A DNA stretch of 64,000 bases from IMG/VR virus record IMGVR_UViG_3300042540_001822, positions 1-64,000 of that record. One strand, given 5' to 3'. Positions 26,527 through 46,656 of the stretch are shown here, piece after piece. Position numbers and translations under genes: made by a program. Each line of letters opens with the position of its first letter. The stretch's first letter is position 1. A model generated the notes under the pieces. That model searched no databases. It had not been told where the DNA came from and saw only the letters and a list, made by a program, of their open reading frames with translations.

Positions 26527-26736
26527 TTAGTGATAATTCATAGGTAAACAATCACAAGATGGTATATCATAAAATTTCTCACCAGTTTCTATATCTTCCA
26601 GTGTGTAATATTTTGTTCCTATTTTCCAAGGAGCATATGTTTTTAAAATTTTATGAACTTTTCCTCTATACTTAATCAATGAACTATCACTAACATCAGA
26701 TACATTCAATTCTGAGTTTTCGTTTTCTGATTTCAT
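26527..26736 (-). CDS. cassette-derived small protein
   Basis: Stop lies in GTTA at 26526; leader …LNVSDVSDS crosses the right cassette end. Confidence 0.65.
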   Translation of the reverse strand: MKSENENSELNVSDVSDSSLIKYRGKVHKILKTYAPWKIGTKYYTLEDIETGEKFYDIPSCDCLPMNYH

Positions 26737-26871
26737 TTTATTCTATGGCTTTATGGTTTGGTGTTTGTTTTTACAAATATACAAATAAGTTTCGGGATCT
26801 CCAAATCTTACTTACACAAATACATCATATTCCTGGTGTATAAGTGAAAGAAAACTGGACAAATAAACGAG

Positions 26872-27090
26872 TTATACAACATTTATAAAATCCTCTATCC
26901 GTTGATTAACTCGTTTTATTTTTTCGTGATTTTCGTCTTGATGGTAAATCAATTCTCTTCTACAATATTCTTCGTAATTATGACCACGTTCCGCAACCAT
27001 CCATTTTTCTTTCTTTTCAAGTCTTTCTGTGAGAATTGATTTGATTTGTTTTAAATCACTCAAACTCATTGTTTTAATATTAAGTTCCAT
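26872..27090 (-). CDS. cassette-borne small helical protein
   Basis: Lies within the 10-bp inverted ends 26871/27109. Confidence 0.65.
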   Translation of the reverse strand: MELNIKTMSLSDLKQIKSILTERLEKKEKWMVAERGHNYEEYCRRELIYHQDENHEKIKRVNQRIEDFINVV

Positions 27091-27102
27091 AAAATAAACG
27101 TT

Positions 27103-27196
27103 GTATAACAAGGTATATACGAAATACCCTATTAAGGTTTATACTAAATTTTAAAGTTTGTTGTTAGGGTACTTCGTATATACCCAACCGTTATGT
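27103..27196 (+). mobile_element. attC-like site a
   Basis: TAAC-AA-[20-bp stem with one A.C mismatch]-CAACC-GTTA. Confidence 0.75.
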
Positions 27197-27197
27197 T

Positions 27198-27425
27198 TCA
27201 TTTTAGACGAGCATACCATTTCAATCTATCATCATTACCAATTTCAACTAATTCAAATTTAACTTTACAGTTTTCTAATATTTTCCAAGGATGAAAATTA
27301 AAACTCAACGGGTCTATTGGTAATTCACCATTTCTATTACCTGTTAAATTTGAGTTATCGCATTTCACAACCCAATAAGGTGTTGTGTTGAAATTGGTTG
27401 ATTTAATTAATATTCCTATTTCCAT
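27198..27425 (-). CDS. cassette-associated hypothetical protein
   Basis: Ends next to GTT 27190. Confidence 0.6.
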   Translation of the reverse strand: MEIGILIKSTNFNTTPYWVVKCDNSNLTGNRNGELPIDPLSFNFHPWKILENCKVKFELVEIGNDDRLKWYARLK

Positions 27426-27468
27426 ATTTATTTAAGTTTAAAACGACATTTATCTGTAACCGTTATGT

Positions 27469-27690
27469 TCAAGTTTTTGAAACAGGACTAACCTCCACAA
27501 TTTCAATTTGGGAAGTTTTATTCAACAGTACCCTATTAGAATATTTAGAAATAATAAAATCTCTAATATCATCAACTGTTGAATTTTCGTCAATTCCATC
27601 TTTCTTCCAAAAAGTCATAGTGTAATTTTGATTATTTCTAAATCTATCACCACTTTTAACAGATACGTTTTTTAATTTAACTGATACCAT
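27469..27690 (-). CDS. cassette-associated hypothetical protein
   Basis: Ends next to GTT 27462. Confidence 0.6.
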   Translation of the reverse strand: MVSVKLKNVSVKSGDRFRNNQNYTMTFWKKDGIDENSTVDDIRDFIISKYSNRVLLNKTSQIEIVEVSPVSKT

Positions 27691-27736
27691 ATTTTTTTAA
27701 TTTATAAAACAATAATTTAACTAAATAAAACAAAAA

Positions 27737-27970
27737 TTATGAGTTTTTCAGTTTTCCCCATCTTTTGTTAAATTCTTCATCTGTTTTAAGTTTTTCCAAA
27801 AATTCATCCTCTGAATAGTTTGAAGTTGTTGTTGTCTTAAATGGTAATTCAACCGGTAATTCTCTCACAACTTCCCATTTTCTTTGTTCTTCAGGATTCA
27901 TTTTTTCAAGTTCATCCATATATTGTCTCCATAATGGATTTTCATCTTCTGTATTTAATTTCCAACTCAT
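27737..27970 (-). CDS. hypothetical protein ending in NS*
   Basis: Carries the shared AACTCATAATTTTTG tail. Confidence 0.6.
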   Translation of the reverse strand: MSWKLNTEDENPLWRQYMDELEKMNPEEQRKWEVVRELPVELPFKTTTTSNYSEDEFLEKLKTDEEFNKRWGKLKNS

Positions 27971-28017
27971 AATTTTTTGTTTTTTATATTAATTTGTATA
28001 ATTTTTGTTTTACATAC

Positions 28018-28071
28018 TTATAACAAATGATAGACAACATTAAAACGATTGTTTATCATCGAACGTTATAA
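28018..28071 (+). mobile_element. attC-like site b (54 nt, CATTAAAACGA loop family)
   Basis: ATGATAGACAA/TTGTTTATCAT stem between TAAC and GTTA. Confidence 0.75.
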
Positions 28072-28075
28072 GAAA

Positions 28076-28246
28076 TTATTTTTTAATCACTATTCCATTA
28101 TCTTTACAAAATTTTTGATCAACAATCCATTTGTTTTTATCCCAATCCCAAACATACATTCCATATATTCTACCAGGATAAGTCATAGGTGGAATTTTTG
28201 TAAAAACCCCTTCTAATATTATTTTTTCTTCTTTCTTTTTCCCCAT
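28076..28246 (-). CDS. 56-aa cassette ORF (below the ORF-track cut-off)
   Basis: MGKKKEEKIILEG...VIKK*; inside cassette 28065-28276. Confidence 0.6.
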   Translation of the reverse strand: MGKKKEEKIILEGVFTKIPPMTYPGRIYGMYVWDWDKNKWIVDQKFCKDNGIVIKK

Positions 28247-28316
28247 TTGTGTATATTAAAAATAACTACTTATAACAAAGTGTAAATAAACACGCAAAAC
28301 ATTATGTGCAAGCCTA

Positions 28317-28490
28317 CTATTCCGCTTCGATATGATTATATATTAATTTCATTACCCAAGCATTTTCAAACTCATAGAACCCACAAGTCGAGCAAGCATC
28401 TTCTTCGGTATCATAGTAGATTATTTTACCTTCTTTATTTTTCATAAAGTCCATATTTCTAAGGTCTATGATTACATATTGGTCTTTCAT
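28317..28490 (-). CDS. 57-aa cassette ORF (below the ORF-track cut-off)
   Basis: MKDQYVIIDL...HIEAE*; inside degenerate cassette 28301-28538. Confidence 0.6.
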   Translation of the reverse strand: MKDQYVIIDLRNMDFMKNKEGKIIYYDTEEDACSTCGFYEFENAWVMKLIYNHIEAE

Positions 28491-28637
28491 TTCGTTTTAA
28501 AATTAAATTTAATGATGATAAGCCGCCCAGCACATAAGAGCGGTTTGGCAAGGCTTGTTGGTTGGTTTTATGGGTTTAGGGTGTGGGGTCGGGGAAGGAA
28601 AACTGGACAAATAAACGATTTATGTGTAATAAAAAAA

Positions 28638-28922
28638 TTATTCAGCACTCACAAAATGACTTTTCTTCAATTCAGAAAAAGTTTCAAATCTTTTTTGTTT
28701 ATCGTCAATTGTTAAAAGATAGTAATACTGTTCACCATATTGAAAATGTGCCTTCTTTTCAATTTTAGCATTACCCTTAGTAAAGTTTCCTACTTTTTTA
28801 TGTTCATCTCCCGAAAATATAAAGTCCATATTAATTGTGTATTGATACTCGTCATTAAACCAGTAATACTTGTCAACATTTTTATCATCAAAAAAAGATT
28901 TGAATTTCTTAATTATACCCAT
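28638..28922 (-). CDS. cassette-borne protein with CTS-like N-terminus
   Basis: MGIIKKFKSFF; cassette 28619-28958. Confidence 0.6.
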   Translation of the reverse strand: MGIIKKFKSFFDDKNVDKYYWFNDEYQYTINMDFIFSGDEHKKVGNFTKGNAKIEKKAHFQYGEQYYYLLTIDDKQKRFETFSELKKSHFVSAE

Positions 28923-28963
28923 TTTGTTGTTTTAATTTATTTTTTACATACACATAACAAGGT

Positions 28964-29164
28964 TTAGGTGTATATGTAAAATAAATCCAAGTTTCTATGT
29001 TTCACTCTACAAAACTTACCATCTTTAGTTTCAATTAAGAAACTAATATCACCTCTATCTAAGTTTATCTTTTCTCGAATGTATCCATCAACTAATGATG
29101 TTCCGAGATTGAAACTGATATGTGTCCCAACTTCTAATTCTTTGTTCATTTTACAATCAATCAT
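28964..29164 (-). CDS. hypothetical protein
   Basis: Start set at MIDCKMNKEL. Confidence 0.5.
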   Translation of the reverse strand: MIDCKMNKELEVGTHISFNLGTSLVDGYIREKINLDRGDISFLIETKDGKFCRVKHRNLDLFYIYT

Positions 29165-29214
29165 GTGTATAAATTTTAAGTTACTAAATACAACAACAAA
29201 TATAAGAAATAAAA

Positions 29215-29559
29215 TTAAACGCCAAACCAAGAACCATTGTGTAGATAACACTGATTTATTACCTCACCAGTTTCAGTGTTTTTAATATCGTATCTTGGTT
29301 TATCCTCTGTCAGATAAATTTTCCTATCAAAATAACCTTTAGTGATTATTGAAATATTTTTAATAATATCATATCCCATGTTTTTGTATTCTGAAAAGGT
29401 AATATATCTTTCTTTGCCTATATTACCATCATAAACTAACATCAACGGTTCTTTTGAGTCAACCCATCCTGAAAATTTATCATGTTTGTTGATGATATTA
29501 AAAACATCCATTCCTTTTGTGGTTACTTTTTCACCTAAATTAAATTCTTTCATATTCAT
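29215..29559 (-). CDS. hypothetical protein
   Basis: Start set at MNMKEF; the upstream extension overlaps attC c. Confidence 0.55.
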   Translation of the reverse strand: MNMKEFNLGEKVTTKGMDVFNIINKHDKFSGWVDSKEPLMLVYDGNIGKERYITFSEYKNMGYDIIKNISIITKGYFDRKIYLTEDKPRYDIKNTETGEVINQCYLHNGSWFGV

Positions 29560-29581
29560 ATTTTTGTTTAATTTTACATTC

Positions 29582-29635
29582 ATACAACAAATGATAAAAA
29601 ACATTAAAACGAACACATATTCTTAACCGTTATAA
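29582..29635 (+). mobile_element. attC-like site c (chimeric arms)
   Basis: Left arm resembles b/d, right arm resembles i; joined at the shared loop. Confidence 0.6.
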
Positions 29636-29641
29636 GTAATA

Positions 29642-29761
29642 TTATTTTTGTTCAAGTAATTTAATTAATTCATCATATTCTTGTTGATTTTCTTCTTTTA
29701 TTACTTTTAACATATAACCCATCGGTGTTAGGTATTCTTTCTTTTCTTTCTTCTTTTTCAT
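29642..29761 (-). CDS. 39-aa cassette ORF
   Basis: MKKKKEKKEYLTPMGY...LLEQK*; lies between GTT 29629 and TAAC 29789. Confidence 0.45.
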   Translation of the reverse strand: MKKKKEKKEYLTPMGYMLKVIKEENQQEYDELIKLLEQK

Positions 29762-29794
29762 AATTTTAAATTTTTTAACTAAGTATAACAAAAA

Positions 29795-30277
29795 TTATTG
29801 TTCATCACTCTCAATAACTATATCTTCTGAATCTAAATTTTCAGAAACCAATTCATCAACAACTTGCTCTATTGTCTTTTTATATTCTTCCATCTGTTCT
29901 TTTTCATTAATGTAGTCAATAATCTCATTTAATTTATTTCTAAATTGCGAAAGTTTTTGACCAATTGTTTCTTCTTGAAAATTTGATTCTCTTGATGTTT
30001 TTAATCTTTCTATTTTTTTCATATTGTATAATTTTTGATACTCATCTACAATTAGTTTTATGTTGTATGTGTCTTTGCTAAACTCTGATTTATGAATATA
30101 CCAAGTCAAAAAATCAACTAACAATCCACTAACAACAGGTTCATTCAATTTAATAACCTCGCTTTCTAATATAATTTCAGCAATAGTTGTCATAGCAGCA
30201 TTTTCCTCTTTATTCCACATATCCATTCCATATCCTGTCTTTTCTATGTATTTCTCTATCAAGTAATCTGATGTCAT
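29795..30277 (-). CDS. hypothetical protein
   Basis: 5' leader GTTAGGTTTAGTTAAATTATTG is shared with gene 32456. Confidence 0.6.
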   Translation of the reverse strand: MTSDYLIEKYIEKTGYGMDMWNKEENAAMTTIAEIILESEVIKLNEPVVSGLLVDFLTWYIHKSEFSKDTYNIKLIVDEYQKLYNMKKIERLKTSRESNFQEETIGQKLSQFRNKLNEIIDYINEKEQMEEYKKTIEQVVDELVSENLDSEDIVIESDEQ

Positions 30278-30315
30278 AATTCTTTTTTTAATTTGTAAAA
30301 CAATAATTTAACTAA

Positions 30316-30369
30316 ACCTAACAAATGATAAACAACATTAAAACGATTGTTTATCATCGGACGTTAGCG
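30316..30369 (+). mobile_element. attC-like site d (54 nt)
   Basis: Perfect 11-bp stem ATGATAAACAA/TTGTTTATCAT. Confidence 0.8.
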
Positions 30370-30648
30370 ACCATTAAAAGACCGCCACAATTCGACAAAC
30401 TTTTCACGTTTCATTTGCCTTAATTCTCTATTATGCGCATATTTTCTTTCGTGGTAAATTTCTATTTCACTACCACCTGTGAAGTAAACTGAATACGTTA
30501 ACCAGGAACTATCCCCGCCAACTTGACCTACTCTTTCAATTTTTCGTAAATCAATGGTGTCGCCCCCAATATCAACTAAAGGATTAACGGCTTCTAACAC
30601 ATTATTTGCATCAGTGGGGGTGTCGTTTTTCAAATTATCTTTCTGCAT
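30364..30648 (-). CDS. cassette-derived protein
   Basis: Stop in GTTA; leader …TDANNVLEAV. Confidence 0.65.
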   Translation of the reverse strand: MQKDNLKNDTPTDANNVLEAVNPLVDIGGDTIDLRKIERVGQVGGDSSWLTYSVYFTGGSEIEIYHERKYAHNRELRQMKREKFVELWRSFNGR

Positions 30649-30721
30649 GTTATTAAAGTTTTGTGCTTCAATTTAAGAAAAAACTACATATATCTGTGAT
30701 CGTTAGCAGTAATACTACCAA

Positions 30722-31018
30722 TCAGTGCTGATTTTTCAAATAATTTGTTGTACATTCTATCCAACACTTTGCTTTATCCGTATTATCCATAAAATCAACT
30801 TTATGAACAAATAAACAAGTAAATTTTTCAGACCATCCCATTGGTAGCCAAAGAGTATTCATGTATCCTTCCAATAATTCCTTATTAGATTTTTCAAATT
30901 TAGTTTCATCTCTTTGTGATAGCCAATCCTCACACATTCTAACTATCGGTTGGAATTCTGGTATTCCAATCACATTTACTATTTTATTCAATATTTTTTC
31001 AGATTCAAATTGATTCAT
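30722..31018 (-). CDS. hypothetical protein
   Basis: Start set at MNQFES; the track extension is an attC half-site. Confidence 0.6.
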   Translation of the reverse strand: MNQFESEKILNKIVNVIGIPEFQPIVRMCEDWLSQRDETKFEKSNKELLEGYMNTLWLPMGWSEKFTCLFVHKVDFMDNTDKAKCWIECTTNYLKNQH

Positions 31019-31061
31019 ATTTTTAAGTTTTGTGGTAAGGTACTTCGCATATGCCCAGCCG

Positions 31062-31280
31062 TTATGCAAAAGGTAGCGGACAACCGTTCGGTATTGTATC
31101 AGCGTCTACAATTTCAACATCCAGTTTTTCACACCAGTGTTTACCCCATCTGTATTCATGATTACCATCATCGTGAATATGATGAGGACATTGCCAACAA
31201 CACTCAACAACCACTACCCTTCGCATAACATTATGTTGCTGCAATGTGGGCTGACCGTTTTCATTTTTACTGTTGTTCAT
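31062..31280 (-). CDS. cassette-derived Cys-rich small protein
   Basis: CCWQCPH...WC...CPLP; cassette 31061-31229. Confidence 0.7.
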   Translation of the reverse strand: MNNSKNENGQPTLQQHNVMRRVVVVECCWQCPHHIHDDGNHEYRWGKHWCEKLDVEIVDADTIPNGCPLPFA

Positions 31281-31321
31281 CTATGTTTCTTGTTTTGTTC
31301 TTTTTACTCAAATTCGTAAAA

Positions 31322-31504
31322 TTACTGTTTTGTGTTTTCTAATTTATTCTCTAATTCCTCCACTTTGTTTCTCCAATATCTCGTAACCGTATATTGTGCT
31401 GAACGAATATAATCGTATGGATGAACATATCCACCCCATCTTAATTTATATTCTTCTTCTTCTAGAGTTTTCTTAGCCTCTTTCAATTCTTCCTCTATGT
31501 TCAT
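31322..31504 (-). CDS. hypothetical coiled-coil protein
   Basis: ORF track. Confidence 0.55.
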   Translation of the reverse strand: MNIEEELKEAKKTLEEEEYKLRWGGYVHPYDYIRSAQYTVTRYWRNKVEELENKLENTKQ

Positions 31505-31511
31505 ATATTCT

Positions 31512-31787
31512 TTAATTTGTATTTTTTAATTTATTCAAAGTAATCACGTTATTTAGTTGCACTTCTTTTAATGTGATTTTTCGTGTATCTTTAAAGTTTT
31601 CGATTACTTCATCCAAATTTTTACTCATGTGTTTATCAAAATCACTTTCAGTTGGGTGGTCTAGATTAGCCTCAAACTCTACCTCAAAACCGTGTTCACT
31701 TAAAAATTTCTTTAATAAGTAAGTTAAACGAGATTTACCAGATGCAACTTGCCCTGATACTGTAATAATTAAATCTTTCTTTTCCAT
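31512..31787 (-). CDS. small P-loop-like protein fragment
   Basis: ITVSGQVASGKS; promoter at 31819. Confidence 0.6.
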   Translation of the reverse strand: MEKKDLIITVSGQVASGKSRLTYLLKKFLSEHGFEVEFEANLDHPTESDFDKHMSKNLDEVIENFKDTRKITLKEVQLNNVITLNKLKNTN

Positions 31788-31928
31788 TTTATTTTTTTAT
31801 AGTTTAGTGTTTGTTTTACAAATATACGAATAAGTTTTCAGATTTCCAAATTTTATCCACACAAATACATCATATTTCTGGTGTATAAGTGAAGAAAAAC
31901 TGGACAAATAAACGAGTTATAAACAATT

Positions 31929-32162
31929 TTAAGAAACATGTTCCCTTGTATTGAGTTCCGTTTTAATTAAACTCAAAAAATCTTTATGTTCATTGTATTT
32001 TTGCTCCATATCTGATTGTGTTGCTCGTGCTTCCCATATCATTTCACCACATCCACAACTGCACCAATACCCGACACCGTAAAATCTTCTACGTTCTGCT
32101 TTGTAAAATCGTAATAGATTTTTTGTATTTAATTTTCTTAATTCTTCGATTGACTTTCCCAT
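31929..32162 (-). CDS. cassette-borne small protein
   Basis: CSCGCG; cassette 31916-32181. Confidence 0.65.
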   Translation of the reverse strand: MGKSIEELRKLNTKNLLRFYKAERRRFYGVGYWCSCGCGEMIWEARATQSDMEQKYNEHKDFLSLIKTELNTREHVS

Positions 32163-32174
32163 AATAAAAACTGT

Positions 32175-32270
32175 TTATAACAAGGTGTATATGTAATTTT
32201 TTTTTACAAAGATATGAATAATTTTTGAAATTTCCAAATAAAAAACTACATATACACCCAACCGTTAGGT
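32175..32270 (+). mobile_element. attC-like site e with a promoter in its loop
   Basis: 17-bp stem (one A.C mismatch); loop holds TTTG-N20-TATCTTTG on the minus strand. Confidence 0.75.
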
Positions 32271-32456
32271 TCAATCATTAATTTGTTTTGATTTTTTTAA
32301 TTCTTCTTCTAACTCTTTTAATTGAATTTCCCAATGTTTCTTAAATTTAATCCAAAATTCATTTCCATTAGGTCCTTCCACCTCAATCTTTTCTCCACAA
32401 AATTTTATTGATGTTTTACAATGTTCAATTTTATCCTCTGTTGTTAAGTAATTCAT
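32271..32456 (-). CDS. cassette-borne small protein
   Basis: Cassette 32264-32504. Confidence 0.6.
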   Translation of the reverse strand: MNYLTTEDKIEHCKTSIKFCGEKIEVEGPNGNEFWIKFKKHWEIQLKELEEELKKSKQIND

Positions 32457-32546
32457 ATTTCTATTTTTTTTAATTTGTAAAACAATAATTTAACTAAACC
32501 TAACATATAAACGAAAACTCGTTTATTTGTCCACTCTTCTAATTAT

Positions 32547-32969
32547 TTAATAACCAAAATCTCCATACAAATCTTGAAAAGATAAATCATTCATAGCACC
32601 TAAATCATTCCAATGTTCAAGATTATTATTCTTTTTTGATTTGTGTTTTGGTGTTGCCCTTTCACTTCTCGATGGCGGTAATGAATTATAAGCATCATCC
32701 CAATATTTTTGCCAAAAATTCAAATCTTCTTTTGATAAGTCTCTTAATTTGATGGTACATTTACTCAAACTTGTTAGAGTTTCTTTTTCTTGTATAGTTG
32801 CTTCGTTTTCATGTAGTTTCCCAACTAAATTTTGAAGCCACCATCCTTTAATTTGATAGTAAGGATGTTTTAGTCCTCTGTTGTCTAATACAGATTTTGG
32901 TATCCAACCATTACCTTCTAGTTTATATGCTTTCTCTGTTTCTTGAATAATATTTAATTTTACTAACAT
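32547..32969 (-). CDS. hypothetical protein
   Basis: ETEKAY...WIPKS N-terminal beta motif. Confidence 0.65.
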   Translation of the reverse strand: MLVKLNIIQETEKAYKLEGNGWIPKSVLDNRGLKHPYYQIKGWWLQNLVGKLHENEATIQEKETLTSLSKCTIKLRDLSKEDLNFWQKYWDDAYNSLPPSRSERATPKHKSKKNNNLEHWNDLGAMNDLSFQDLYGDFGY

Positions 32970-33069
32970 AGTTTAATGTTTAAATTTATTAATTGCCTCT
33001 CTAAAATTTTGTATTTCAATTTAAGTTTAGTTAAACACTACGTTTATACCCAACCGTTAGCGGTAATTG

Positions 33070-33261
33070 TTAAAGTTCTTCTTTTTCCATTTTACCACAC
33101 CTTACACAATATCGTGTTTGGATTGTGCCAACATAAGGATATTGTTGCCCTTGTTTAACTAATAACATATCTATATTTTCTTGTTTCCATTTAGTCCACT
33201 TGTGTCTCCAAAAACAACTACCGTTAACAACGGTTTGGCTAGATTCAGGGGTTGCTTCCAT
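33070..33261 (-). CDS. cassette-derived small Zn-binding protein
   Basis: CFWRHKW...CVRCG; leader SSQTVVNGS; cassette 33056-33228. Confidence 0.7.
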   Translation of the reverse strand: MEATPESSQTVVNGSCFWRHKWTKWKQENIDMLLVKQGQQYPYVGTIQTRYCVRCGKMEKEEL

Positions 33262-33390
33262 AGGTTTAAAGTTTGTTTTTACAAATATACGAATAAGTTT
33301 TCAGATTTCCAAATTTTATCCACACAAATACATCATATTTCTAGTGTATAAGTGAAGAAAAACTGGACAAATAAACGAGTTATCGGAAAT

Positions 33391-33693
33391 TCATTTTTCT
33401 TCCGACTCCTGCTCCGAAGAAGGTTGTTGCTTTTCAAATTCTTCTCTGATTTTAGTTAATCTTGAAAACTCTGCTACCCAAGCATCTAATGTCATTCCAT
33501 TTACTGAAATGTTTTCAAGCCTGTCCCTACCATCACCATCCCAATCAATTACCACTTCTCTACTACTACCCATTTGCCCAAGACTTCGTAGTTTTGAAAA
33601 AAATTCTAATAGTGGCTTTACTGCATCATCTGAGCAGGTAAATGAAATGACATTTTGAAAAGCAATGTTTGGTGTTTTAAATTTTTGTTCCAT
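33391..33693 (-). CDS. cassette-borne protein
   Basis: MGSSR...DWDGDG; cassette 33379-33738. Confidence 0.7.
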   Translation of the reverse strand: MEQKFKTPNIAFQNVISFTCSDDAVKPLLEFFSKLRSLGQMGSSREVVIDWDGDGRDRLENISVNGMTLDAWVAEFSRLTKIREEFEKQQPSSEQESEEK

Positions 33694-33731
33694 TTTAAAT
33701 TAAGTTTATTACCCACGAAAAATGAACTATC

Positions 33732-33827
33732 CGATAACACGGGTTTGGCAAAATGCCACCAAATAGTTTGTGCCAAGATTGAAAGTTCGTGCAAGGTGGC
33801 ACTTCGCCAAGCCCGAAGCCGTTATGT
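33732..33827 (+). mobile_element. attC-like site f
   Basis: CGGGTTTGGCAAAATGCCACC/GGTGGCACTTCGCCAAGCCCG stem, 18 of 21 Watson-Crick pairs. Confidence 0.8.
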
Positions 33828-33834
33828 GTAATTG

Positions 33835-34152
33835 CTACATTCCGTACATTTGAAGAACTATATTCTTTGAACGACATAATTCAGCCCAAGCTTCTTGACA
33901 GTAATTTCTACCGTGTAATGCGTTATTAAATTCGTGACACAATTCAGTTACCAATGATTCAATGTCTTGTGTTAAATCAATTTGTGTTTCGTATTGGTAT
34001 CTTCCACGCAATATTCCATCCTCGTATAAGTGCAATTCACTTTTCGCTCTTGTTTCTAAATCTACATAGAATTGGTCTTTTTCGCTATTGTAGTGCATTG
34101 ATGTAGAAATTCCTTTCTTTGCCAACGCTTTCATTATGTCTTGTATTTCCAT
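33835..34152 (-). CDS. hypothetical protein
   Basis: Promoter at 34179; ends next to GTT 33821. Confidence 0.65.
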   Translation of the reverse strand: MEIQDIMKALAKKGISTSMHYNSEKDQFYVDLETRAKSELHLYEDGILRGRYQYETQIDLTQDIESLVTELCHEFNNALHGRNYCQEAWAELCRSKNIVLQMYGM

Positions 34153-34287
34153 TTTATTTTTGTTTACTGTTTGTTTTACAAATATACAAATAAATTTTTA
34201 GATTTACAAATTTTACCCCCCACAAATACATCATATTCCTGGTGTATAAGTGAAGGGAAACTGGACAAATAAACGAGTTATGTGCCA

Positions 34288-34488
34288 TTAAGAACCATAA
34301 CCGTTTTTAACCATTTTTTGACGAATTTGTTCAGCTATTTCTAACTTTATCTTTTCGTCTTGGTCATATCTTCCAACAAGGAAATTAAATGATTTTAACA
34401 TTGCAGTCCTTAACTCAAGTTGGTCATCATTTGGATATATTTTCCACATATATTCAACAAATTCGGCTTCGGTTTTACATAATTTCAT
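34288..34488 (-). CDS. cassette-borne small protein
   Basis: Cassette 34277-34513. Confidence 0.65.
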   Translation of the reverse strand: MKLCKTEAEFVEYMWKIYPNDDQLELRTAMLKSFNFLVGRYDQDEKIKLEIAEQIRQKMVKNGYGS

Positions 34489-34506
34489 GCTTCAAAAATT
34501 AACGGC

Positions 34507-34597
34507 ACATAACAAGGTATATGTGAAATACCTTATAAAGTTTCTACTAATTTTTAAGTTCGTCTTTAGGTACTTCACATATACCCAACTGTTATAT
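34507..34597 (+). mobile_element. attC-like site g
   Basis: TATATGTGAAATACCT/AGGTACTTCACATATA stem (one A.C mismatch). Confidence 0.8.
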
Positions 34598-34921
34598 TCA
34601 ATTTTCAATTTGTTTTGGAATTTCTACCCATTTATTATCAACCAATTTATATCGTGTTTCATAATCAAATGAAGTCTCGGAAGCATCATTATTAAAATAT
34701 AAAATATTTTCCATATCCCAACTACTTCTATAAAAGGTGTGTTCGTTATTTTCACAATGAATTACAGTGTTTCCGTCCATAACTATCATCGCATTTATAT
34801 GTGTTGAAAATAACTTACCCCCACATATCGGACATTTATGTTCATATTCATTTATATCACACCAATAATCACCCATTCTTTTTTGTTGGTATCTAAACCA
34901 TTCTAATTTTTCTTTTCCCAT
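34598..34921 (-). CDS. Zn-binding hypothetical protein
   Basis: CPICGG. Confidence 0.6.
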   Translation of the reverse strand: MGKEKLEWFRYQQKRMGDYWCDINEYEHKCPICGGKLFSTHINAMIVMDGNTVIHCENNEHTFYRSSWDMENILYFNNDASETSFDYETRYKLVDNKWVEIPKQIEN

Positions 34922-35008
34922 AATTTTATATTTTACTTACACAAATATATCATATTCTTGGTGTATGTGTGAAGGAAACCTGGACAAATAAACGAGTTAG
35001 CAGAAATA

Positions 35009-35278
35009 CTACTGAGCGTTACTAACAGGAATTGCATCTGCATCTAAATTATGGTCGTGTCTTTGCAGTTCAGAAACTAAATAGTTATCTCTAACAGACT
35101 TGTGAAATGGCTCAACATAACCTTCTTTTGCAAAATACCATTCGCCTTGATAGTTAAACTCAAAGCCACTATCTCGCATACAAATTGACATAGTTTCACC
35201 ACTTGCAGTTTTTAAAGTTAAACCGCTAAAAACTTCTTCTAATTGGATACCTAAATCCTCTGTTACTGTTACTTTCAT
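35009..35278 (-). CDS. cassette-borne protein
   Basis: Cassette 34996-35333. Confidence 0.65.
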   Translation of the reverse strand: MKVTVTEDLGIQLEEVFSGLTLKTASGETMSICMRDSGFEFNYQGEWYFAKEGYVEPFHKSVRDNYLVSELQRHDHNLDADAIPVSNAQ

Positions 35279-35326
35279 TTTGTTATTTATTTAAGTTAAA
35301 AATTCGTTTTAATTACACCGTACTTC

Positions 35327-35412
35327 TGCTAACAGCACATAAGCAAAAGCCCAAATCCAACCGCATAATGCCACCGCTATTTGTGCCTTCGCTTATCTGC
35401 AAACCGTTATAA
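35327..35412 (+). mobile_element. attC-like site h
   Basis: GCACATAAGCAAAAGC/GCCTTCGCTTATCTGC stem between TAAC and GTTA. Confidence 0.7.
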
Positions 35413-35427
35413 GTAATGAAACAAAAA

Positions 35428-35619: not shown

Positions 35620-35696
35620 ATTGTAAAATTTTTGTTTTAAGTTTTGTGGTAAGGTACTTCACATATACCCAACCGTTATATTCAATATCAAAAATT

Positions 35697-35993: not shown

Positions 35994-36035
35994 TTGTATA
36001 AAATTTTTGATACTAAATATAACAAAGAATATGTG

Positions 36036-37395: not shown

Positions 37396-37421
37396 ATTAA
37401 ATTATTGTTTATCATCAGTCG

Positions 37422-37667: not shown

Positions 37668-37736
37668 TTTATTTAGTTTTTAACATTTCGGTGTATGGAT
37701 GAAGAAAAACTGGACAAATAAACGAGTTAGCAACAA

Positions 37737-37946
37737 TTAGTGCTGACCATACCTCAAATGAATGTTATCATAATCAGTGTCATAATAAGCACCGTTTTCT
37801 TGCTTATGTTTCTTTATACATTGGTATAAATATATTTCGGTTAATCCAACCAAAGAACAATCACATTTATCCCAAACATTATACAGTTGTTTAATTTCGT
37901 CATCATTCAAATCTAATAAACTTTCTATTGTGTTCTTTTCATTCAT
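37737..37946 (-). CDS. hypothetical protein
   Basis: Follows attI-like junction 37726. Confidence 0.55.
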   Translation of the reverse strand: MNEKNTIESLLDLNDDEIKQLYNVWDKCDCSLVGLTEIYLYQCIKKHKQENGAYYDTDYDNIHLRYGQH

Positions 37947-38190
37947 AAATCAACGTTTTATATCAAGGTATAAATTCAATTAAATATTTTTACTATCTCT
38001 CTAACCTTATCAATCAAAAAATTAGTTTCTTCAATATGATGTTGTTCCAATCTTTTATACCTTTCTTCCCAAGTCAATGTATCATCATCCTTGTATTTTT
38101 TGATTTTAATCCACTTGTATGTTTCAAGTATTTCTTTCTTTTCTAATTCTTCCATAATAAAATATTTAATTAGATTTATACTAAGGAATA

Positions 38191-38409
38191 TTATTTTTGT
38201 TTTGAGAATGTTGATATAACACTATCAATAACTTCTTCTTTACTACCAATATCCCACCAATCTGGATTTTGTTTTAGTTTATACTCTGGATTATCGTTAT
38301 GATAAGTTTCTACCAACCCATCAACTAATCCATTCCACGAAATATTGTTCTGTTCTAAAACTGAAACAATCTCCGCATATTTAATCATTTTTTCTACTAT
38401 TTCTTCCAT
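38191..38409 (-). CDS. hypothetical protein
   Basis: ORF track. Confidence 0.55.
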   Translation of the reverse strand: MEEIVEKMIKYAEIVSVLEQNNISWNGLVDGLVETYHNDNPEYKLKQNPDWWDIGSKEEVIDSVISTFSKQK

Positions 38410-38549
38410 AATTTATATTTTTTAATAAGTTTCATATAACAAGGTGTATGGGAAATTTTTTATCAAATATACATCATATTCCTGATGTATGGATGAAGGA
38501 AACCTGGACAAATAAACGAGTTATAGCCAATACTACCGAAGTACTTCGA

Positions 38550-38978
38550 TTAAGCATTTAGTGGCTCATCAAAGATTACATTCCAACTATCTAATGGTTG
38601 CCAACCGCCACCCATAGTCATTACTTCTAAATCTGATGATGGTATATTTTTGAACGTAATATATTCGTCACCTTTATTATTTACTATTCTTGGTGATAGT
38701 TGAAAATCATCAGTCAATTTTGTTCTCAAAACACACATTTTACTAATCCCACCTTTTGATTTAGCATAGTATTTAGCATAATCTAAATCGTTTGTAAAAC
38801 TAATTGATGGTTGTTCTTCACCAGTTCTATTTGGTTTCATATATCCATCGTACTGTATATTCATTGCTTGTCCTTTACCTGTTCCATGATAAATATAATC
38901 ATCTTGTTTTATATCTTCATTTACAAATTGATTGAATGATTTAACCTCATCAATCATATCTCGTATTTCTTTACTCAT
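38550..38978 (-). CDS. ADP-ribosyltransferase-like protein with CTS-like N-terminus
   Basis: YIYHGT...PSISFTNDLDYAKYYA; N-terminus …KSFNQFVNE. Confidence 0.55.
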   Translation of the reverse strand: MSKEIRDMIDEVKSFNQFVNEDIKQDDYIYHGTGKGQAMNIQYDGYMKPNRTGEEQPSISFTNDLDYAKYYAKSKGGISKMCVLRTKLTDDFQLSPRIVNNKGDEYITFKNIPSSDLEVMTMGGGWQPLDSWNVIFDEPLNA

Positions 38979-39091
38979 TTTGTTTATGTTTATATAAAAA
39001 TATTTCTATGTTTCTACAAAAATACATCATATTCCTGGTGTATAAGTGAAAGAAAACTGGACAAATAAACGAGTTATAGATAATAAAATAT

Positions 39092-39340
39092 CTATTTAAT
39101 CTTAGTTCCTTTTGGAACAAATTTCTTCAAATCTTTTTTCAATTGTTTATCTACTGATTTAGAGTATTCTTCATCATTTTCAATCATCCAAGTATGAAGT
39201 TGAAGAAATTCTTTTTCTGATAGAGTTTCACCATCTAATTTACGTTGAATAAGTTTAGATATTTTACTATCTATAAAATCAGATATATTCAAGTTTTCTT
39301 GATGTTCGTTGAAACTTTGTATGTGTTTATTACCTTTCAT
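39092..39340 (-). CDS. hypothetical protein with CTS-like N-terminus
   Basis: KHIQSFNE; AATATATA at 39360-39367. Confidence 0.6.
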   Translation of the reverse strand: MKGNKHIQSFNEHQENLNISDFIDSKISKLIQRKLDGETLSEKEFLQLHTWMIENDEEYSKSVDKQLKKDLKKFVPKGTKIK

Positions 39341-39382
39341 CTTCGTAAATTGTTTTTAGTATATATTAAAAAGAAAACCTAA

Positions 39383-39436
39383 ATACAACAAATGAGAAAC
39401 AACATTAAAACGATTGTTTATCACACGACGTTGGCA
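39383..39436 (+). mobile_element. attC-like site j (54 nt)
   Basis: CAAC-AAATGAGAAACAA-CATTAAAACGA-TTGTTTATCACACGAC-GTTGGCA. Confidence 0.7.
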
Positions 39437-39720
39437 ACCACCTCTGTTGGAATTATTGTAAAATCCACCACTCTATACACACCATTTTCGTCTTCAAAAG
39501 AAATCTTACCAAATGTTTGTCCATTTTTAGTTTCCGAATCAGATACGTTAGTTTCAAACTTCAAATTTGAGTTTAATCGATCTTGTAAAATTTCTTTCAA
39601 ATCATCTACTGGTCCAAATAAGTTTTCTTCTATGAAAGACTTTACCTCGACTTCCACCAACATTCCTCTGTGACTTCTGTTTTCTATTTTCATCATGATT
39701 TTGGGTTTTAATTTGTGCAC
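39421..39720 (-). CDS. hypothetical protein whose C-terminus reads into attC j
   Basis: Ends …EVVANVV*; -7 box at 39742. Confidence 0.55.
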   Translation of the reverse strand: MHKLKPKIMMKIENRSHRGMLVEVEVKSFIEENLFGPVDDLKEILQDRLNSNLKFETNVSDSETKNGQTFGKISFEDENGVYRVVDFTIIPTEVVANVV

Positions 39721-39789
39721 CTTAGTTTATGGTTTGTTTTACAAATATACAAATAGGTTTTTTATTTAGTCTATATAAATATTCAAAAA

Positions 39790-44081: not shown

Positions 44082-44582
44082 TTAGGCTGGCTGAGAATCC
44101 AACCGATTGAGTTCGGTTGGAATTGCTGGGGTGGTTGGGTTGGTGTTGGCGAAGCAGTCATCCCCAAGGCCCCTTTCGATAGATTGGGGATTGGTGAGGG
44201 GAAGGCCACACCGGCAACACCGACCTTCGTGAAGAAGGGAAATTCCCTTGGTGCGAAGAAGGTGTGGATGAGCAACAGCGTTGAGGACGAAGTTGAACAC
44301 CTGGGCGAGTTGGGAGTTGGGGAGAAGATTTTTTGCGGGTTTGTAGGTCATGGTGTCCTGGAAGATGGTCCCCGCAAAAACCATGCCTTGTTCCTTGTCA
44401 CCCAGAAGGGAAATGTTGACAAAGAAAATGGGGAGACGGACCTTGCGGTCTTTTTTGTCCCGGGCCTGCTTCACATGCACTGTGATGTGCTTTTCGGTCG
44501 CAGGGTTGAAGAAGGTGAGGACTGCACGACCTGCAAAGAAGAGGCGTGGGAGGGAGAGGGGGTTGACGTTGGAACGTATCAT
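44082..44582 (-). CDS. DUF6011-type Zn-finger protein
   Basis: CCRCGLPLTNPQSIERGLGDDC; start set at MIRSNV. Confidence 0.75.
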   Translation of the reverse strand: MIRSNVNPLSLPRLFFAGRAVLTFFNPATEKHITVHVKQARDKKDRKVRLPIFFVNISLLGDKEQGMVFAGTIFQDTMTYKPAKNLLPNSQLAQVFNFVLNAVAHPHLLRTKGISLLHEGRCCRCGLPLTNPQSIERGLGDDCFANTNPTTPAIPTELNRLDSQPA

Positions 44583-45070
44583 AGGTGGTTGGTTTATAAT
44601 GTAAAGATACGACATATCCCCGAGGATAAAAAATTAAACCCCGTTTTTTTCCAATTTATTTTTGGTCCAAAATTCCCCGGAGAAAACAAAGAATGCATAC
44701 GCATAAAACCCCGGGGTTTCCCATCCTGGCTTGGCCCAGCCTGGGCAGGCTGGGGCTCGGGCCTTGGCTGGGGATGGATAGGCCTTACCAGGCCAGGCTG
44801 GACCTGAGGTTAATAACCCGACGGTTTGATGTGTTTTATGGTTGGTTTCGTTCGGGGTTTTCGTGTGAAGTGGAAAGGGTATAAGAAGGTAGGATTAATT
44901 TAATGGAAAAAAACATACTCAAAACCTTTACTTTATGGAAAAAATGAATTGAAAATTGCCAATGATGATATTTTGGTGGAATAAAAAAGGCCCTCTTTTA
45001 TCGCGCGCTAAGAGTATGTTAGTGACATACTATGTTTTTGGGGGCCTTACCTATTTAAGCAAATAAGTTT

Positions 45071-45262
45071 TTACAAGGAATGATTATACCCATTAACCAA
45101 TCGTTCTGCAAATTCTTTATCCCTAGTTTTTAGGATAAGGTTTTTTGTTTGTTCTACATGCCCTCTGTGTATCTCATATTCTGTTGGAAATTTGCGTTCC
45201 AACAAAACAAGAGAATCTTTACCTTTAACAAATGCTTGACAGGAATCAGGGTTTGGTTTCAT
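45071..45262 (-). CDS. hypothetical protein
   Basis: ORF track. Confidence 0.55.
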   Translation of the reverse strand: MKPNPDSCQAFVKGKDSLVLLERKFPTEYEIHRGHVEQTKNLILKTRDKEFAERLVNGYNHSL

Positions 45263-45300
45263 GGGTTAGGTGTTACACGAATATACAAGTTATCGGAAAT

Positions 45301-45645
45301 TCATTTTTTTCCCGGATCAGTGTAAAAACAAAGTGTGTGGAATAAACCAAATGAAATTGATTTGAACTCTCTCGAAAAAATGTTGTAAGTGTTGAATAGT
45401 TCTTCAAACTCAAAATACATTTTATGTAGAATTTCATTTGCTTTTTCCCTTTCAATCTTACCTTTCTCTTGTTCAATTCTAACATCTAATGCGTTCCAAG
45501 CCAACGAATATACTCTTGCAATTAGTTTATCTGAAAATACCCCACACAACTGCATATTAGCCAGAAGTTTATTGTGTGCTTCGTAGTTTGGTTGAAGTTT
45601 TTTTAATTCTTTTGGTGGTTCACCAACTTGATAATCTAAGTTCAT
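45301..45645 (-). CDS. hypothetical protein
   Basis: Promoter at 45666; left end GTTATCGGAAATTCATTTTT identical to 33379. Confidence 0.65.
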   Translation of the reverse strand: MNLDYQVGEPPKELKKLQPNYEAHNKLLANMQLCGVFSDKLIARVYSLAWNALDVRIEQEKGKIEREKANEILHKMYFEFEELFNTYNIFSREFKSISFGLFHTLCFYTDPGKK

Positions 45646-45708
45646 ATGTTTAGTGTTTGTTTTTACAAATATACAAATAAATTTCTAAATTTTCAAATCT
45701 TATCTACA

Positions 45709-45948
45709 CTAATATACAAGTTGTAGGTAATGCCTTGAAAACCATTCCTCAAATTTCAATGCTTTGTCAGGAACATCTTTAATATCAGTATCCACACTTC
45801 TATTTTTGTATTGTTCCATATCAAACATTCTACCATTACTCCACGCCTTTCTAAGATGTTCCTTGAAAAAGGCACTACTCATAACAGCAGATATAAGCAA
45901 TTGCTCATCGCTGTTATTAAGTTTTTGTTGTTTATTATCATTCTTCAT
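45709..45948 (-). CDS. cassette-derived protein that starts inside the attC k loop
   Basis: Leader …EQLLISAVMSSA. Confidence 0.65.
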   Translation of the reverse strand: MKNDNKQQKLNNSDEQLLISAVMSSAFFKEHLRKAWSNGRMFDMEQYKNRSVDTDIKDVPDKALKFEEWFSRHYLQLVY

Positions 45949-46008
45949 ATTATCAAATTTTGTCTGTTAATTAAAAGAGCAACTGCTCATATCTGCAAAC
46001 CGTTTTAG
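45879..46008 (+). mobile_element. attC-like site k
   Basis: GCAGATATAAGCAATTGCTC/GAGCAACTGCTCATATCTGC, 18 of 20 pairs with two A.C mismatches; R' degenerate. Confidence 0.7.
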
Positions 46009-46021
46009 CTAATAAAATTTA

Positions 46022-46237
46022 CTACGCCTTTACCCATTTTTTACCATTGTGTTTTAATTCTACAACTTGTTTTAATTTCGTTTGTTCATCGTATGCTTCA
46101 ACATTACTACTGTCTAAAGGGTGTTCACCCCATCTGCTGTAAGTAAGTTGTTGTTCCCACAATTCTCTTGCCTGTTTTTCGTCCTTTGCCATTATTACAA
46201 CTTCTGCTTTAATAATGAATTTTTTAATTGTTTTCAT
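46022..46237 (-). CDS. hypothetical protein
   Basis: ORF track. Confidence 0.55.
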   Translation of the reverse strand: MKTIKKFIIKAEVVIMAKDEKQARELWEQQLTYSRWGEHPLDSSNVEAYDEQTKLKQVVELKHNGKKWVKA

Positions 46238-46278
46238 AATCCGTAAATTTTCAAATCTTACCTACACTAATATACAAG

Positions 46279-46656
46279 TTAGCGGTCAGCTTTAGACAGT
46301 TCACTTTTCAGCCACTCTTTACGCCAATTAAGACAGTAGTTAATGGCATCTTCAAGTTTCTTAAACTCTTTACTATGCGGTAATTCCATAAACATTGAAA
46401 TATCGTGAACATTACACACATCGTGTTTAGTTCTTGGACACACCCACCAATGAGTTTTTTTGTATTTAGTATAATCTTTGTTATCAGGTGGACAACCATC
46501 TAACCCACAAATAACATCAAAAGGCATAAAGATACCTTTCCAAACAACTTCCCAGCATCCACTACCTTCTGAATAGTTTTTGGGAGTTTTCAATGACCAA
46601 GCCGAACCGCTAACACGGGTTTGGCAAAATGGCTGTTCAGTAATTCTATTTGACAT
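46279..46656 (-). CDS. cassette-derived protein
   Basis: Leader …PFCQTRVSGSA; cassette 46278-46614. Confidence 0.65.
   Translation of the reverse strand: MSNRITEQPFCQTRVSGSAWSLKTPKNYSEGSGCWEVVWKGIFMPFDVICGLDGCPPDNKDYTKYKKTHWWVCPRTKHDVCNVHDISMFMELPHSKEFKKLEDAINYCLNWRKEWLKSELSKADR

What the first reader, a model, noticed from the sequence alone, without database searches (positions are those of the whole stretch)
26527..46656. ORFs run antisense to attC and gain N-terminal leaders from the attC arm
All cassette ORFs are on the inferred bottom strand, and many stop exactly at the TAA complementary to GTTA. Several start outside the cassette and read through the attC left arm, which gives a recurring leader ending in V-[SMIN]: LNVSDVSDS (26736), TLQQHNVMRR (31280), SSQTVVNGS (33261), MLLSGVSGS (37395), QLLISAVMSS (45948), PFCQTRVSGS (46656). 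For 45948 the start codon lies inside the loop of the intact site k. This suggests recombination sites double as translation-initiation modules that make in-frame fusions, and may explain similar pseudo-conserved leaders in many small phage ORFs.
Basis: partly seen in the sequence, partly recalled or inferred. Interest (0 to 1): 0.8.

Follow-up and report, generated by a model that had tools for sequence, protein, structure and literature searches.

The report
Hairpin-bounded gene modules in a phage
A giant uncultured freshwater phage carries about 45 tiny genes, each bracketed by its own pair of matching end sequences and separated by hairpin spacers that can supply the start codon and a short leader, so related phages reshuffle genes and leaders like building blocks.

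Summary
All small ORFs at 26.5-39.8 kb and 45.1-46.7 kb lie on the minus strand.

The anatomy is two kinds of abutting stem-loops on the ORF-sense strand:
- Gene modules, GTTA-N6-GT...ORF...AT-N6-TAAC. Their own ends pair over 12-22 nt, with an invariant G.T at position 11.
- Linker hairpins, TAAC-ggttg-stem...stem-tt-GTTA. Their loops hold promoter-like sites, 5'UTRs, ATGs and leaders.

Related metagenome contigs carry the same modules at 92-98% identity in other orders. One protein body occurs with at least seven different leaders, all joined at the box-encoded VSGS. Every body without its own ATG reads GTT as Val.

So leader swapping at the junction is supported by comparison, but translation itself is not shown.

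"Antisense to attC" is not supported, because two strand criteria conflict. No integrase was found in the 74 kb examined. Indel junctions are short direct repeats of 2-24 nt.

Best reading: PeSL-like regulatory cassettes with attC-like geometry, shuffled by short-homology recombination. This is a new variant of a known kind. The fixed G.T mark is unexplained.

The parts
26470..39760 (-). Main array: about 40 small minus-strand ORFs (GC 27-31%) alternating with linkers
45060..46720 (-). Second piece of the array, separated from the first by a GC-richer block (RecA/KaiC-like ATPase, DUF6011)
26526..26694 (-). Gene module. The ends pair at 15 of 16 positions. ORF 26736-26527 has its only early ATG 42 nt upstream of GTTA, giving the leader MKSENENSELNVSD
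26871..27109 (-). Gene module, ends pair 15/16. ORF 27090-26872 has its own ATG 19 nt after GTTA
   Evidence: L170 shares it at 98.5% identity, with the break exactly at GTTA
28065..28276 (-). Gene module, ends pair 14/16, ORF 28246-28076
31061..31229 (-). Gene module, ends pair 14/16. ORF 31280-31062 has a leader ATG at -51 and a second ATG inside GTTATG
31916..32181 (-). Gene module, ends pair 14/16, ORF 32162-31929
32264..32504 (-). Gene module, ends pair 11/16 with T.G at position 9 and G.T at position 11, ORF 32456-32271
33056..33228 (-). Gene module, ends pair 14/16. ORF 33261-33070 has its ATG 33 nt upstream of GTTA. The homologue in L018 lacks the leader
33379..33738 (-). Gene module with a 1-nt indel in the pairing, ORF 33693-33391
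34277..34513 (-). Gene module, ends pair 14/16, ORF 34488-34288
34996..35333 (-). Gene module, ends pair 13/16, ORF 35278-35009
35675..36023 (-). Gene module, ends pair over 22 nt, ORF 35993-35697
36894..37120 (-). Gene module, ends pair over 22 nt, ORF 37090-36911
37161..37326 (-). Gene module, ends pair 15/16. ORF 37395-37162 has both early ATGs (-69 and -15) upstream of GTTA
45720..45885 (-). Gene module, weaker pairing (12/16). ORF 45948-45709 has a leader ATG at -63 and a second ATG inside GTTATG
46278..46614 (-). Gene module, ends pair with a 1-nt bulge. ORF 46656-46279 has its ATG 42 nt upstream, and the leader ends in the 3' arm of linker family F
27106..27193 (-). Hairpin linker, family B: TAAC + 5 nt + 20-bp stem, then stem + 2 nt + GTTA
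28021..28068 (-). Hairpin linker, family C. The loop ATG at -16 opens a mini-ORF
30319..30366 (-). Hairpin linker, family C. The 6-aa mini-ORF ends at the TAG in the GTTAG box
   Evidence: L185 shares it, with the break exactly at TAAC
32178..32267 (-). Hairpin linker, family B, with a promoter-like site in its loop
33735..33824 (-). Hairpin linker, family F. It lies where ORF 33877-33695 was listed, so that ORF is doubtful
34510..34594 (-). Hairpin linker, family B
35330..35409 (-). Hairpin linker, family E
   Evidence: L165 differs from here on, with the break exactly after TAAC
37117..37164 (-). Hairpin linker, family D. The 8-aa mini-ORF from the loop ATG ends at the TAG at box positions 9-11
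37323..37424 (-). Degenerate C-like linker whose loop holds ATG 37395 and the leader
45882..46005 (-).
26510..26528 (-). Family A linker box (conserved 19-mer starting at the AAC of TAAC). Ten more copies: 26855-26873, 28603-28621, 31900-31918, 33363-33381, 34261-34279, 34980-34998, 36878-36896, 37710-37728, 38504-38522, 39057-39075
   Evidence: The exact 19-mer occurs in 27 viral and 42 metagenome stretches
26774..26805 (-). Promoter-like site TTTG-N20-TAnnTTTG inside a family A linker. Others: 29197-29226, 31819-31850, 32207-32238, 33282-33313, 34179-34210, 45666-45697

Best explanation
The region is the hyperplastic accessory-gene array of an uncultured 219-kb freshwater phage. The host is probably a member of Bacteroidota, which is inferred.

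Architecture, read on the ORF-sense strand, is a chain of abutting stem-loops of two polarities:
- Gene modules run GTTA-N6-GT...ORF...AT-N6-TAAC. Their two ends pair with each other over 12-22 bp, always with G.T at position 11.
- Linker hairpins run TAAC + 5 nt + stem...stem + 2 nt + GTTA. Their loops hold the expression signals: promoter-like TTTG/TAnnTTTG sites, A-rich 5'UTRs, an ATG and sometimes 8-23 leader codons.

Modules and linkers reassort among related phages. This happens by recombination between the short repeated boxes, linker copies and UTR copies. It works like the promoter/stem-loop (PeSL) cassettes of T4-like phages and needs no integron integrase.

The junction GTTA often lies between a linker's ATG and a body that has no ATG of its own. 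Such a body therefore takes its start codon and leader from whichever linker is upstream. The frame is kept because all such bodies read GTT as Val, while the frame that would be hit by the loop ATGs of C and D linkers is closed by a TAG in the box.

Shown: the anatomy, its statistics, the shuffling, and leader-body recombinants.
Inferred: the recombination mechanism, that the hairpins act mainly in the transcript or the sense strand, and that the leader ATGs are used.
For: Anatomy:
- 12 end pairings against about 2 in shuffles.
- 39 of 41 distinct pairs have G/A at position 11.
- A module's box matches its own partner at 13.5 of 16 positions on average, against 6-11 for the neighbour's.
- 37 distinct linkers, 29 of them with the 5 nt versus 1-2 nt bulge geometry.

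Sense-strand signal:
- Wobble-type mismatches are 37 on the sense strand against 5 on the antisense strand.
- Sense folds are more stable in 7 of 8 linkers, with 29 G.U pairs against 7.

Expression signals in linkers:
- Seven promoter-like sites, all on the minus strand upstream of ORFs.
- Loop ATGs and mini-ORFs that end at the box TAG.

Shuffling:
- Metagenome contigs hold the same modules at 92-98% identity in other orders.
- Indels with conserved flanks are bounded by direct repeats. The repeats are 16 nt of linker A, 24 nt of 5'UTR, 12 nt of a TAAC box, one of 9 nt and one of 2 nt.
- A D/C hybrid linker is joined in the shared loop.

Leaders:
-.

Recombinase:
- None in any ORF of at least 110-150 aa across 74 kb.
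- A RecA/KaiC-like ATPase sits inside the array.

Precedent:
- PeSL cassettes (PMC2839356).
Against: - Homology-driven shuffling does not explain why unrelated linker and module families all end in TAAC(GG) and (TT)GTTA.
- It does not explain why each module's two ends stay complementary over up to 22 nt.
- It does not explain the G.T mark fixed one helical turn from the junction.
- Several homology breaks fall exactly at TAAC or GTTA (27109, 28070, 30366, 35406). A site-specific enzyme would also give that.
- An RNA-level role is awkward where the GTTA box lies inside a coding leader, and where the promoter lies inside the hairpin loop.
- Only 74 of 219 kb of the phage could be checked for a recombinase.
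Confidence: 0.55

Rival explanations
1. These are genuine integron attC sites (a very large cluster of attC sites lacking an integrase, a CALIN, carried by a phage). A phage or host IntI recombines them on a folded single strand. The ORFs lie on the recombinogenic strand.
For: - The sites are imperfect palindromes of 48-131 nt ending in AAC...GTT, with an unpaired spacer next to the R box.
- The cassette's 5' end is complementary to its own AAC-side box, as in integron cassettes.
- ORF-less modules exist.
- CALINs of 2-3 sites are known in virulent phages, including a Polaribacter phage, and IntI1 can recombine them (PMC9892861).
Against: - No IntI was found in 74 kb.
- Exchange points occur at both TAAC and GTTA, and also elsewhere.
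- The linker does not consistently travel with the upstream ORF.
- The RYYY/RRRY positions are not kept.
- The bulge side and the stable strand give opposite strand calls.
- The end pairing is 12-22 nt rather than 7.
- The attC covariance models could not be run here.
Confidence: 0.12
2. This is a new, dedicated structure-specific cassette system. An unidentified phage protein recognises roughly 22-bp stems marked by a central G.T on the sense strand, cuts at the TAACGG/TTGTTA junctions, and moves modules and linkers.
For: - The junction boxes and the G.T position are invariant across unrelated stem sequences.
- The complementarity is specific to each module's own ends.
- Some breaks fall exactly at the junctions.
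- ATG-less bodies keep one frame convention, 10 of 10 in one frame.
Against: - There is no candidate enzyme.
- All five indels with conserved flanks are explained by direct repeats of 2-24 nt.
- Many breaks lie inside linkers, UTRs or ORFs.
- The invariants could equally serve RNA processing or stability.
Confidence: 0.2
3. The leaders are an artefact of taking the longest ORF. Translation really starts at or after the GTT, at the ATG in GTTATG or at a non-ATG codon, so the hairpins give no N-terminal residues.
For: - ORFs 31280 and 45948, and seven of 46 modules in all, have an ATG at box positions 4-6.
- The leaders are not conserved among homologues.
- There are no expression data.
Against: - In 26736, 33261, 37395 and 46656 there is no ATG between the GTT and the conserved core.
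- The core of 33261 begins 5 codons after the GTT, and the core of 46656 begins right after VSGS.
- At least 10 distinct ATG-less bodies all keep the leader frame open.
Confidence: 0.08

Closest known systems
PeSL (promoter-early stem-loop) regulatory cassettes of T4-like phages (PMC2839356, PMC4122927)
   Same: - Repeated intergenic motifs combine a host-type promoter with a stem-loop.
- They are concentrated in a hyperplastic region of small orphan genes.
- Close relatives differ by insertion, deletion and reordering of genes, with exchange points inside the repeated motifs, including hairpin loops.
- No dedicated recombinase is known.
   Different: - Here the promoter-like sites are of the TTTG/TAnnTTTG type.
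- All hairpin families share invariant TAAC/GTTA ends and a fixed bulge.
- Each gene has its own 12-22 nt end pairing with a fixed G.T.
- The linker can also supply the start codon and a leader that is fused in frame.
Integron gene cassettes and attC sites, including attC clusters without an integrase (CALINs) in phages (PMC9892861; PMC5027507)
   Same: - The sites are defined by structure rather than sequence and end in AAC...GTT.
- They have an unpaired spacer.
- The cassette's 5' end is complementary to its own AAC-side box.
- The array is co-oriented and made mostly of single small ORFs. ORF-less units also occur.
   Different: - No integrase or attI was found.
- Exchange occurs on both sides of the hairpin and elsewhere.
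- The end pairing is much longer.
- The ORF-sense strand is the stable one.
- The array has tens of sites, against the 2-3 reported so far in virulent phages.
attI1 ORF-11/ORF-18 translational coupling and fused cassettes in class 1 integrons (PMC8876359)
   Same: - A short ORF starts in the recombination site and ends at a TAG inside the GTTAG core of the next cassette.
- Alternatively it is fused to the cassette gene and gives it a foreign N-terminus.
   Different: - Here the start codons sit in the loops of the sites between cassettes, not in attI.
- The fusions are frequent: about a quarter of modules.
RNase III processing hairpins between early genes of T7-like phages, and the long-range stems flanking rRNAs (own knowledge)
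   Same: - Stems of about 20 bp with an asymmetric internal loop lie between cistrons.
- Complementary sequences bracket a whole functional unit.
- The wobble bias is specific to the sense strand.
   Different: - No RNA ends have been mapped.
- Cleavage in the module stem would cut leader-type ORFs off from their ATG.

Membership tests
Integron attC site / cassette array | Imperfect palindrome of about 57-141 nt with R'' RYYYAAC and R' GTTRRRY at its ends | tested here: inconclusive
   AAC and GTT, in fact TAAC and GTTA, are invariant, and lengths are 48-131 nt. The RYYY/RRRY positions are often not met, for example ATAAC and GTTAT.
Integron attC site / cassette array | [quoted passage not shown] | tested here: not met
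   The bulge (5 nt against 1-2 nt) sits next to TAAC on the ORF-sense strand, which makes that strand 'top' (rule in PMC5027507). Yet the ORF-sense strand is the more stable one, with wobble pairs 37 to 5. The two marks disagree.
Integron attC site / cassette array | The first bases of a cassette (TTRRRY) are complementary to its own R'', not to the upstream neighbour's | tested here: met
   Own box 11-15 of 16, neighbour's 6-11 of 16. The pairing extends to 22 nt.
Integron attC site / cassette array | Exchange only at G|TT, so the attC always travels with the upstream ORF | tested here: not met
   Breaks occur at TAAC (27462, 28070, 30366, 35406), at GTTA (27109), and inside linkers, UTRs and ORFs.
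Integron attC site / cassette array | An integron integrase (IntI) with attI and Pc next to the array (not required for a CALIN) | tested here: not met
   No Phage_integrase or other recombinase domain was found in the ORFs of the window or of the next 10 kb. The remaining 145 kb of the contig were not available.
Integron attC site / cassette array | Detection by attC covariance models, and recombination by IntI in an attC x attI assay | not testable with these tools
   The IntegronFinder and HattCI models are not on hand, and Rfam has no attC family (one search found none).
PeSL-type mobile regulatory cassette | A repeated intergenic motif made of a host-type early promoter plus a stem-loop, upstream of orphan genes in a hyperplastic region | tested here: met
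   Family A, B and E linkers carry TTTG-N20-TAnnTTTG together with hairpins. There are about 45 small ORFs, almost none with a family match. Promoter activity itself was not tested.
PeSL-type mobile regulatory cassette | Close relatives differ by gain, loss or reordering of genes, with exchange points inside the repeated motifs | tested here: met
   One example is a 1359-nt indel bounded by two linker A copies. A D/C hybrid linker is joined in the shared loop.
PeSL-type mobile regulatory cassette | Sigma-70 -35/-10 consensus, stem-loops that terminate transcription, and mini-circles detectable by inverse PCR | not testable with these tools
   This needs experiments. The hairpins here are not followed directly by a T run (read from the sequence).
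RNase III-type intercistronic processing site | Mapped RNA 5' and 3' ends inside a stem of about 20 bp in the transcript | not tested

The most novel reading that the evidence does not exclude
The TAACGG/TTGTTA junctions and the fixed G.T mark are the recognition features of a so far unknown phage cassette system, a structure-directed enzyme acting on sense-strand hairpins. This system moves gene bodies and expression/leader modules independently. It keeps a universal reading-frame rule, so that any leader can be fused to any body. It would be a phage counterpart of the integron that also shuffles N-termini.
Probability: 0.2. Interest if true: 0.85.

Novelty: new variant of a known kind. Interest (0 to 1): 0.62.

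Why it matters
Small orphan genes of large phages are thought to be the main pool of host-takeover and counter-defence functions. How they are gained, lost and kept expressible is known in detail only for T4-like coliphages (PeSLs) and for bacterial integrons.

This array shows a third, very regular solution in an uncultured freshwater phage lineage:
- Every gene and every spacer is a self-paired unit with standard ends.
- The spacer can provide the promoter, the start codon and the leader.
- Natural relatives show the same body with many leaders, and the same leader with different bodies.

This has three practical consequences:
- It explains why the N-termini of such phage proteins look 'pseudo-conserved' or hypervariable.
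- It warns annotators about start-codon calls. It also warns about spurious ORFs such as 33877-33695.
- It gives a precise motif, GTTA-N6-G / T-N6-TAAC, for finding such arrays elsewhere.

Tried and rejected
- The 321-aa ORF 43039-44004 as the integrase: it is a RecA/KaiC/DnaB-like ATPase.
- Identifying the phage by DNA or protein similarity to isolated phages: no useful match. The sigma factor hits give no host.
- Looking for the family A box in bacterial genomes: my 15-mer was too short and the 120 loci returned are chance hits.
- Rfam: no family on the hairpins.
- 'Stops exactly at the TAA of TAAC' as a special feature: 15 of 46 is the expected third.
- Linkers as plain intrinsic terminators: no T run directly after the stems.
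- A distant relative of the phage (L149, RecA-like protein 45% identical) has no such end pairs, so the architecture is lineage-specific.
- A literature search for inverted-repeat-flanked small phage genes found nothing.

Full report
**What the window is.**
- The window equals positions 1-64000 of a 219,475-bp viral contig, IMGVR_UViG_3300042540_001822.
- It encodes phage-type proteins: a lysozyme, an HNH/DUF2201 protein, a PNKP-type phosphatase, DUF932, a RecA/KaiC-like ATPase, a Lar-like protein and DUF6011.
- It has no close relative among isolated phages.
- Between 26.5 and 39.8 kb, and again at 45.1-46.7 kb, GC falls to 27-31%.
- About 45 ORFs of 40-190 aa there all lie on the minus strand.

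**Checking the observation.**
- All six quoted leaders are present at the stated starts.
- In each, V-[SMIN] is a GTTA box read as GTT-A...
- The ATG at 45948 lies in the loop of an intact hairpin, 46005-45882.
- Stops that use the TAA of TAAC occur, but at the one-in-three rate expected by chance: 15 of 46.

**Gene modules.** Read on the minus (ORF-sense) strand, each small gene is bracketed by its own inverted repeat.
- The 5' end is GTTA-N6-GT and the 3' end is AT-N6-TAAC.
- Twelve such pairs score at least 10 in the window, against about 2 in shuffles, and 11 of them enclose exactly one ORF.
- With related contigs added there are 41 distinct pairs. They extend to 22 nt, and 39 of them have G opposite T at position 11, often with T opposite G at position 9.
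- The GTTA box matches the TAAC box of its own gene at 11-15 of 16 positions. It matches the neighbouring upstream box at only 6-11.

**Linkers.** Between modules lie linkers of several unrelated sequence families.
- 37 distinct ones form hairpins with one geometry: TAAC, 5 nt (usually ggttg), an 11-22-bp stem, a loop, the stem, 1-2 nt (tt), then GTTA.
- Their mismatches are overwhelmingly of the kind that still pairs on the sense strand, 37 against 5. The G is nearly always on the 5' arm within an AGT/ATT motif.
- Sense folds are more stable than antisense folds in 7 of 8 linkers.
- Many sites are half-sites or hybrids.

**What the linkers carry.**
- Family A is a 19-mer box found exactly in 27 viral and 42 metagenome stretches. 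Some B and E linkers share a feature with it: they contain TTTG-N20-TAnnTTTG.
- There are seven such sites, all on the minus strand upstream of ORFs.
- From my own knowledge this is the Bacteroidota promoter pattern. Together with the absence of Shine-Dalgarno sequences, it is my only basis for the host guess.
- C and D linkers have a conserved loop with an ATG 16 nt before GTT. That frame is closed by a TAG at box positions 3-5 or 9-11, giving 6-8-aa mini-ORFs. This recalls ORF-11 of attI1 (PMC8876359).
- Other linkers carry an ATG plus 8-23 codons in the loop and 3' arm, in the frame where GTT is Val.

**Leaders.** Of 46 distinct modules:
- at least 10 have no ATG of their own near the start and depend on an upstream ATG, and all 10 use that same frame;
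- seven have an ATG inside GTTATG;
- modules with their own ATG use all three frames.

The same linker and leader (MEpTPESxQTVV) is joined to two unrelated bodies. The ..SDVSDS junction is joined to three, and ..CQTRVS to two. The 28 database homologues of ORF 46656 share a core that starts right after VSGS. At least seven different leaders precede VSGS, and distant homologues start directly at the core. In L193 the leader is the 3' arm of a 135-nt hairpin whose loop holds the 5'UTR and the ATG. The homologue of the ORF 33261 body in L018 has a different 9-aa start and no box. Leader swapping at the GTTA junction is therefore real in nature. Whether the leader ATGs are translated was not measured.

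**Mobility.**
- Metagenome contigs carry window modules at 92-98% identity in quite different orders (L162, L185, L191, L187, L153, L158).
- Some homology breaks are exactly at GTTA (27109) or at TAAC (27462, 28070, 30366, 35406).
- Others lie inside linkers, in a shared 5'UTR motif, or inside ORFs.
- Five indels with conserved flanks are bounded by direct repeats: 16 nt of linker A, 24 nt of 5'UTR with ATG, 12 nt of a TAAC box, one of 9 nt and one of 2 nt.
- This is the pattern of short-homology recombination at portable repeats, as described for PeSL cassettes (PMC2839356). It is not the pattern of a single-bond site-specific reaction.

**Is it an integron?**
- The resemblance is real. The sites are structure-defined and end in AAC...GTT, they have an unpaired spacer, and each module's ends are complementary to each other. 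Small attC clusters without an integrase (CALINs) are already known in virulent phages (PMC9892861).
- Several defining features fail. No integrase was found in 74 kb. Exchange occurs on both sides of the hairpin. The linker does not always travel with the upstream ORF.
- The two marks that define the bottom strand disagree. By bulge position the ORF strand is 'top', which is the canonical sense orientation. By stability it is 'bottom'.
- I therefore do not file this as attC, and 'antisense to attC' cannot be upheld.

**What remains unexplained.**
- The invariant junction boxes and the fixed G.T one helical turn from the junction, present in both stem types.
- The maintenance of 12-22-nt end pairing around each gene.
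- These features point to recognition of the sense strand, as RNA or as single-stranded DNA, by some protein.

**Verdict.**
- Observation confirmed.
- Interpretation partly supported. The leader-fusion part is supported. The attC, antisense and recombinase parts are not.
- Best explanation: PeSL-like regulatory hairpin cassettes with attC-like geometry in a new phage lineage.
- Novelty: new variant of a known kind.
- There is a 0.2 chance that a dedicated structure-specific system underlies it.

Noticed in passing
window 26337-26430 (-): A tRNA-like sequence (Rfam tRNA, 32.4 bits) that ARAGORN does not call. It lies inside the array between a family A linker and ORF 26248, and is 95% conserved in contig L166.
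   Followed up: partly
window 33695-33877 (-): The listed 60-aa ORF is probably not a gene. The stretch 33824-33735 is a 90-nt family F hairpin linker.
   Followed up: yes
window 29795-30277 (-): The 160-aa ORF looks like a fusion of two modules. In L185 the two halves are separate, and the second half has its own 5'UTR and ATG, which lie inside the window ORF near 30037.
   Followed up: partly
window 29588-29640 (-): A hybrid linker with the 5' arm of family D and the 3' arm of family C, joined in the shared loop. It cannot fold, and its loop ATG is fused to ORF 29604 because the box there lacks the TAG.
   Followed up: partly
window 40386-40697: A tandem array of a 12-nt unit, 17 or more copies, inside ORF 40660-40418.
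   Followed up: no
window 40661-41196 and 44616-45070: Two long intergenic stretches rich in G runs and C runs. They lie in a GC-richer block (40-46 kb) that splits the array and holds the RecA/KaiC-like ATPase and DUF6011 genes.
   Followed up: no
L173 8469-9353 (-), about 8 kb right of the window on the same contig: A phage-encoded sigma-70-family factor (regions 1.2, 2 and 4). It could read one of the conserved linker boxes as a promoter. More modules and a family A box lie nearby (L009).
   Followed up: no
window 3479-3982 (-), 22640-23167 (-), 36036-36617 (-): A PNKP-type phosphatase domain, an Rv2179c-like 3'-5' exoribonuclease domain, and a Lar-like restriction-alleviation domain. The last of these lies inside the array.
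   Followed up: no
L154 about 480-580: An ORF-less module: a 97-nt unit with 20-bp GTTA...TAAC end pairing, again with G/A at the fixed position, and no coding capacity.
   Followed up: partly
window 49619-49693 (-): A tRNA-Met gene just right of the array.
   Followed up: no
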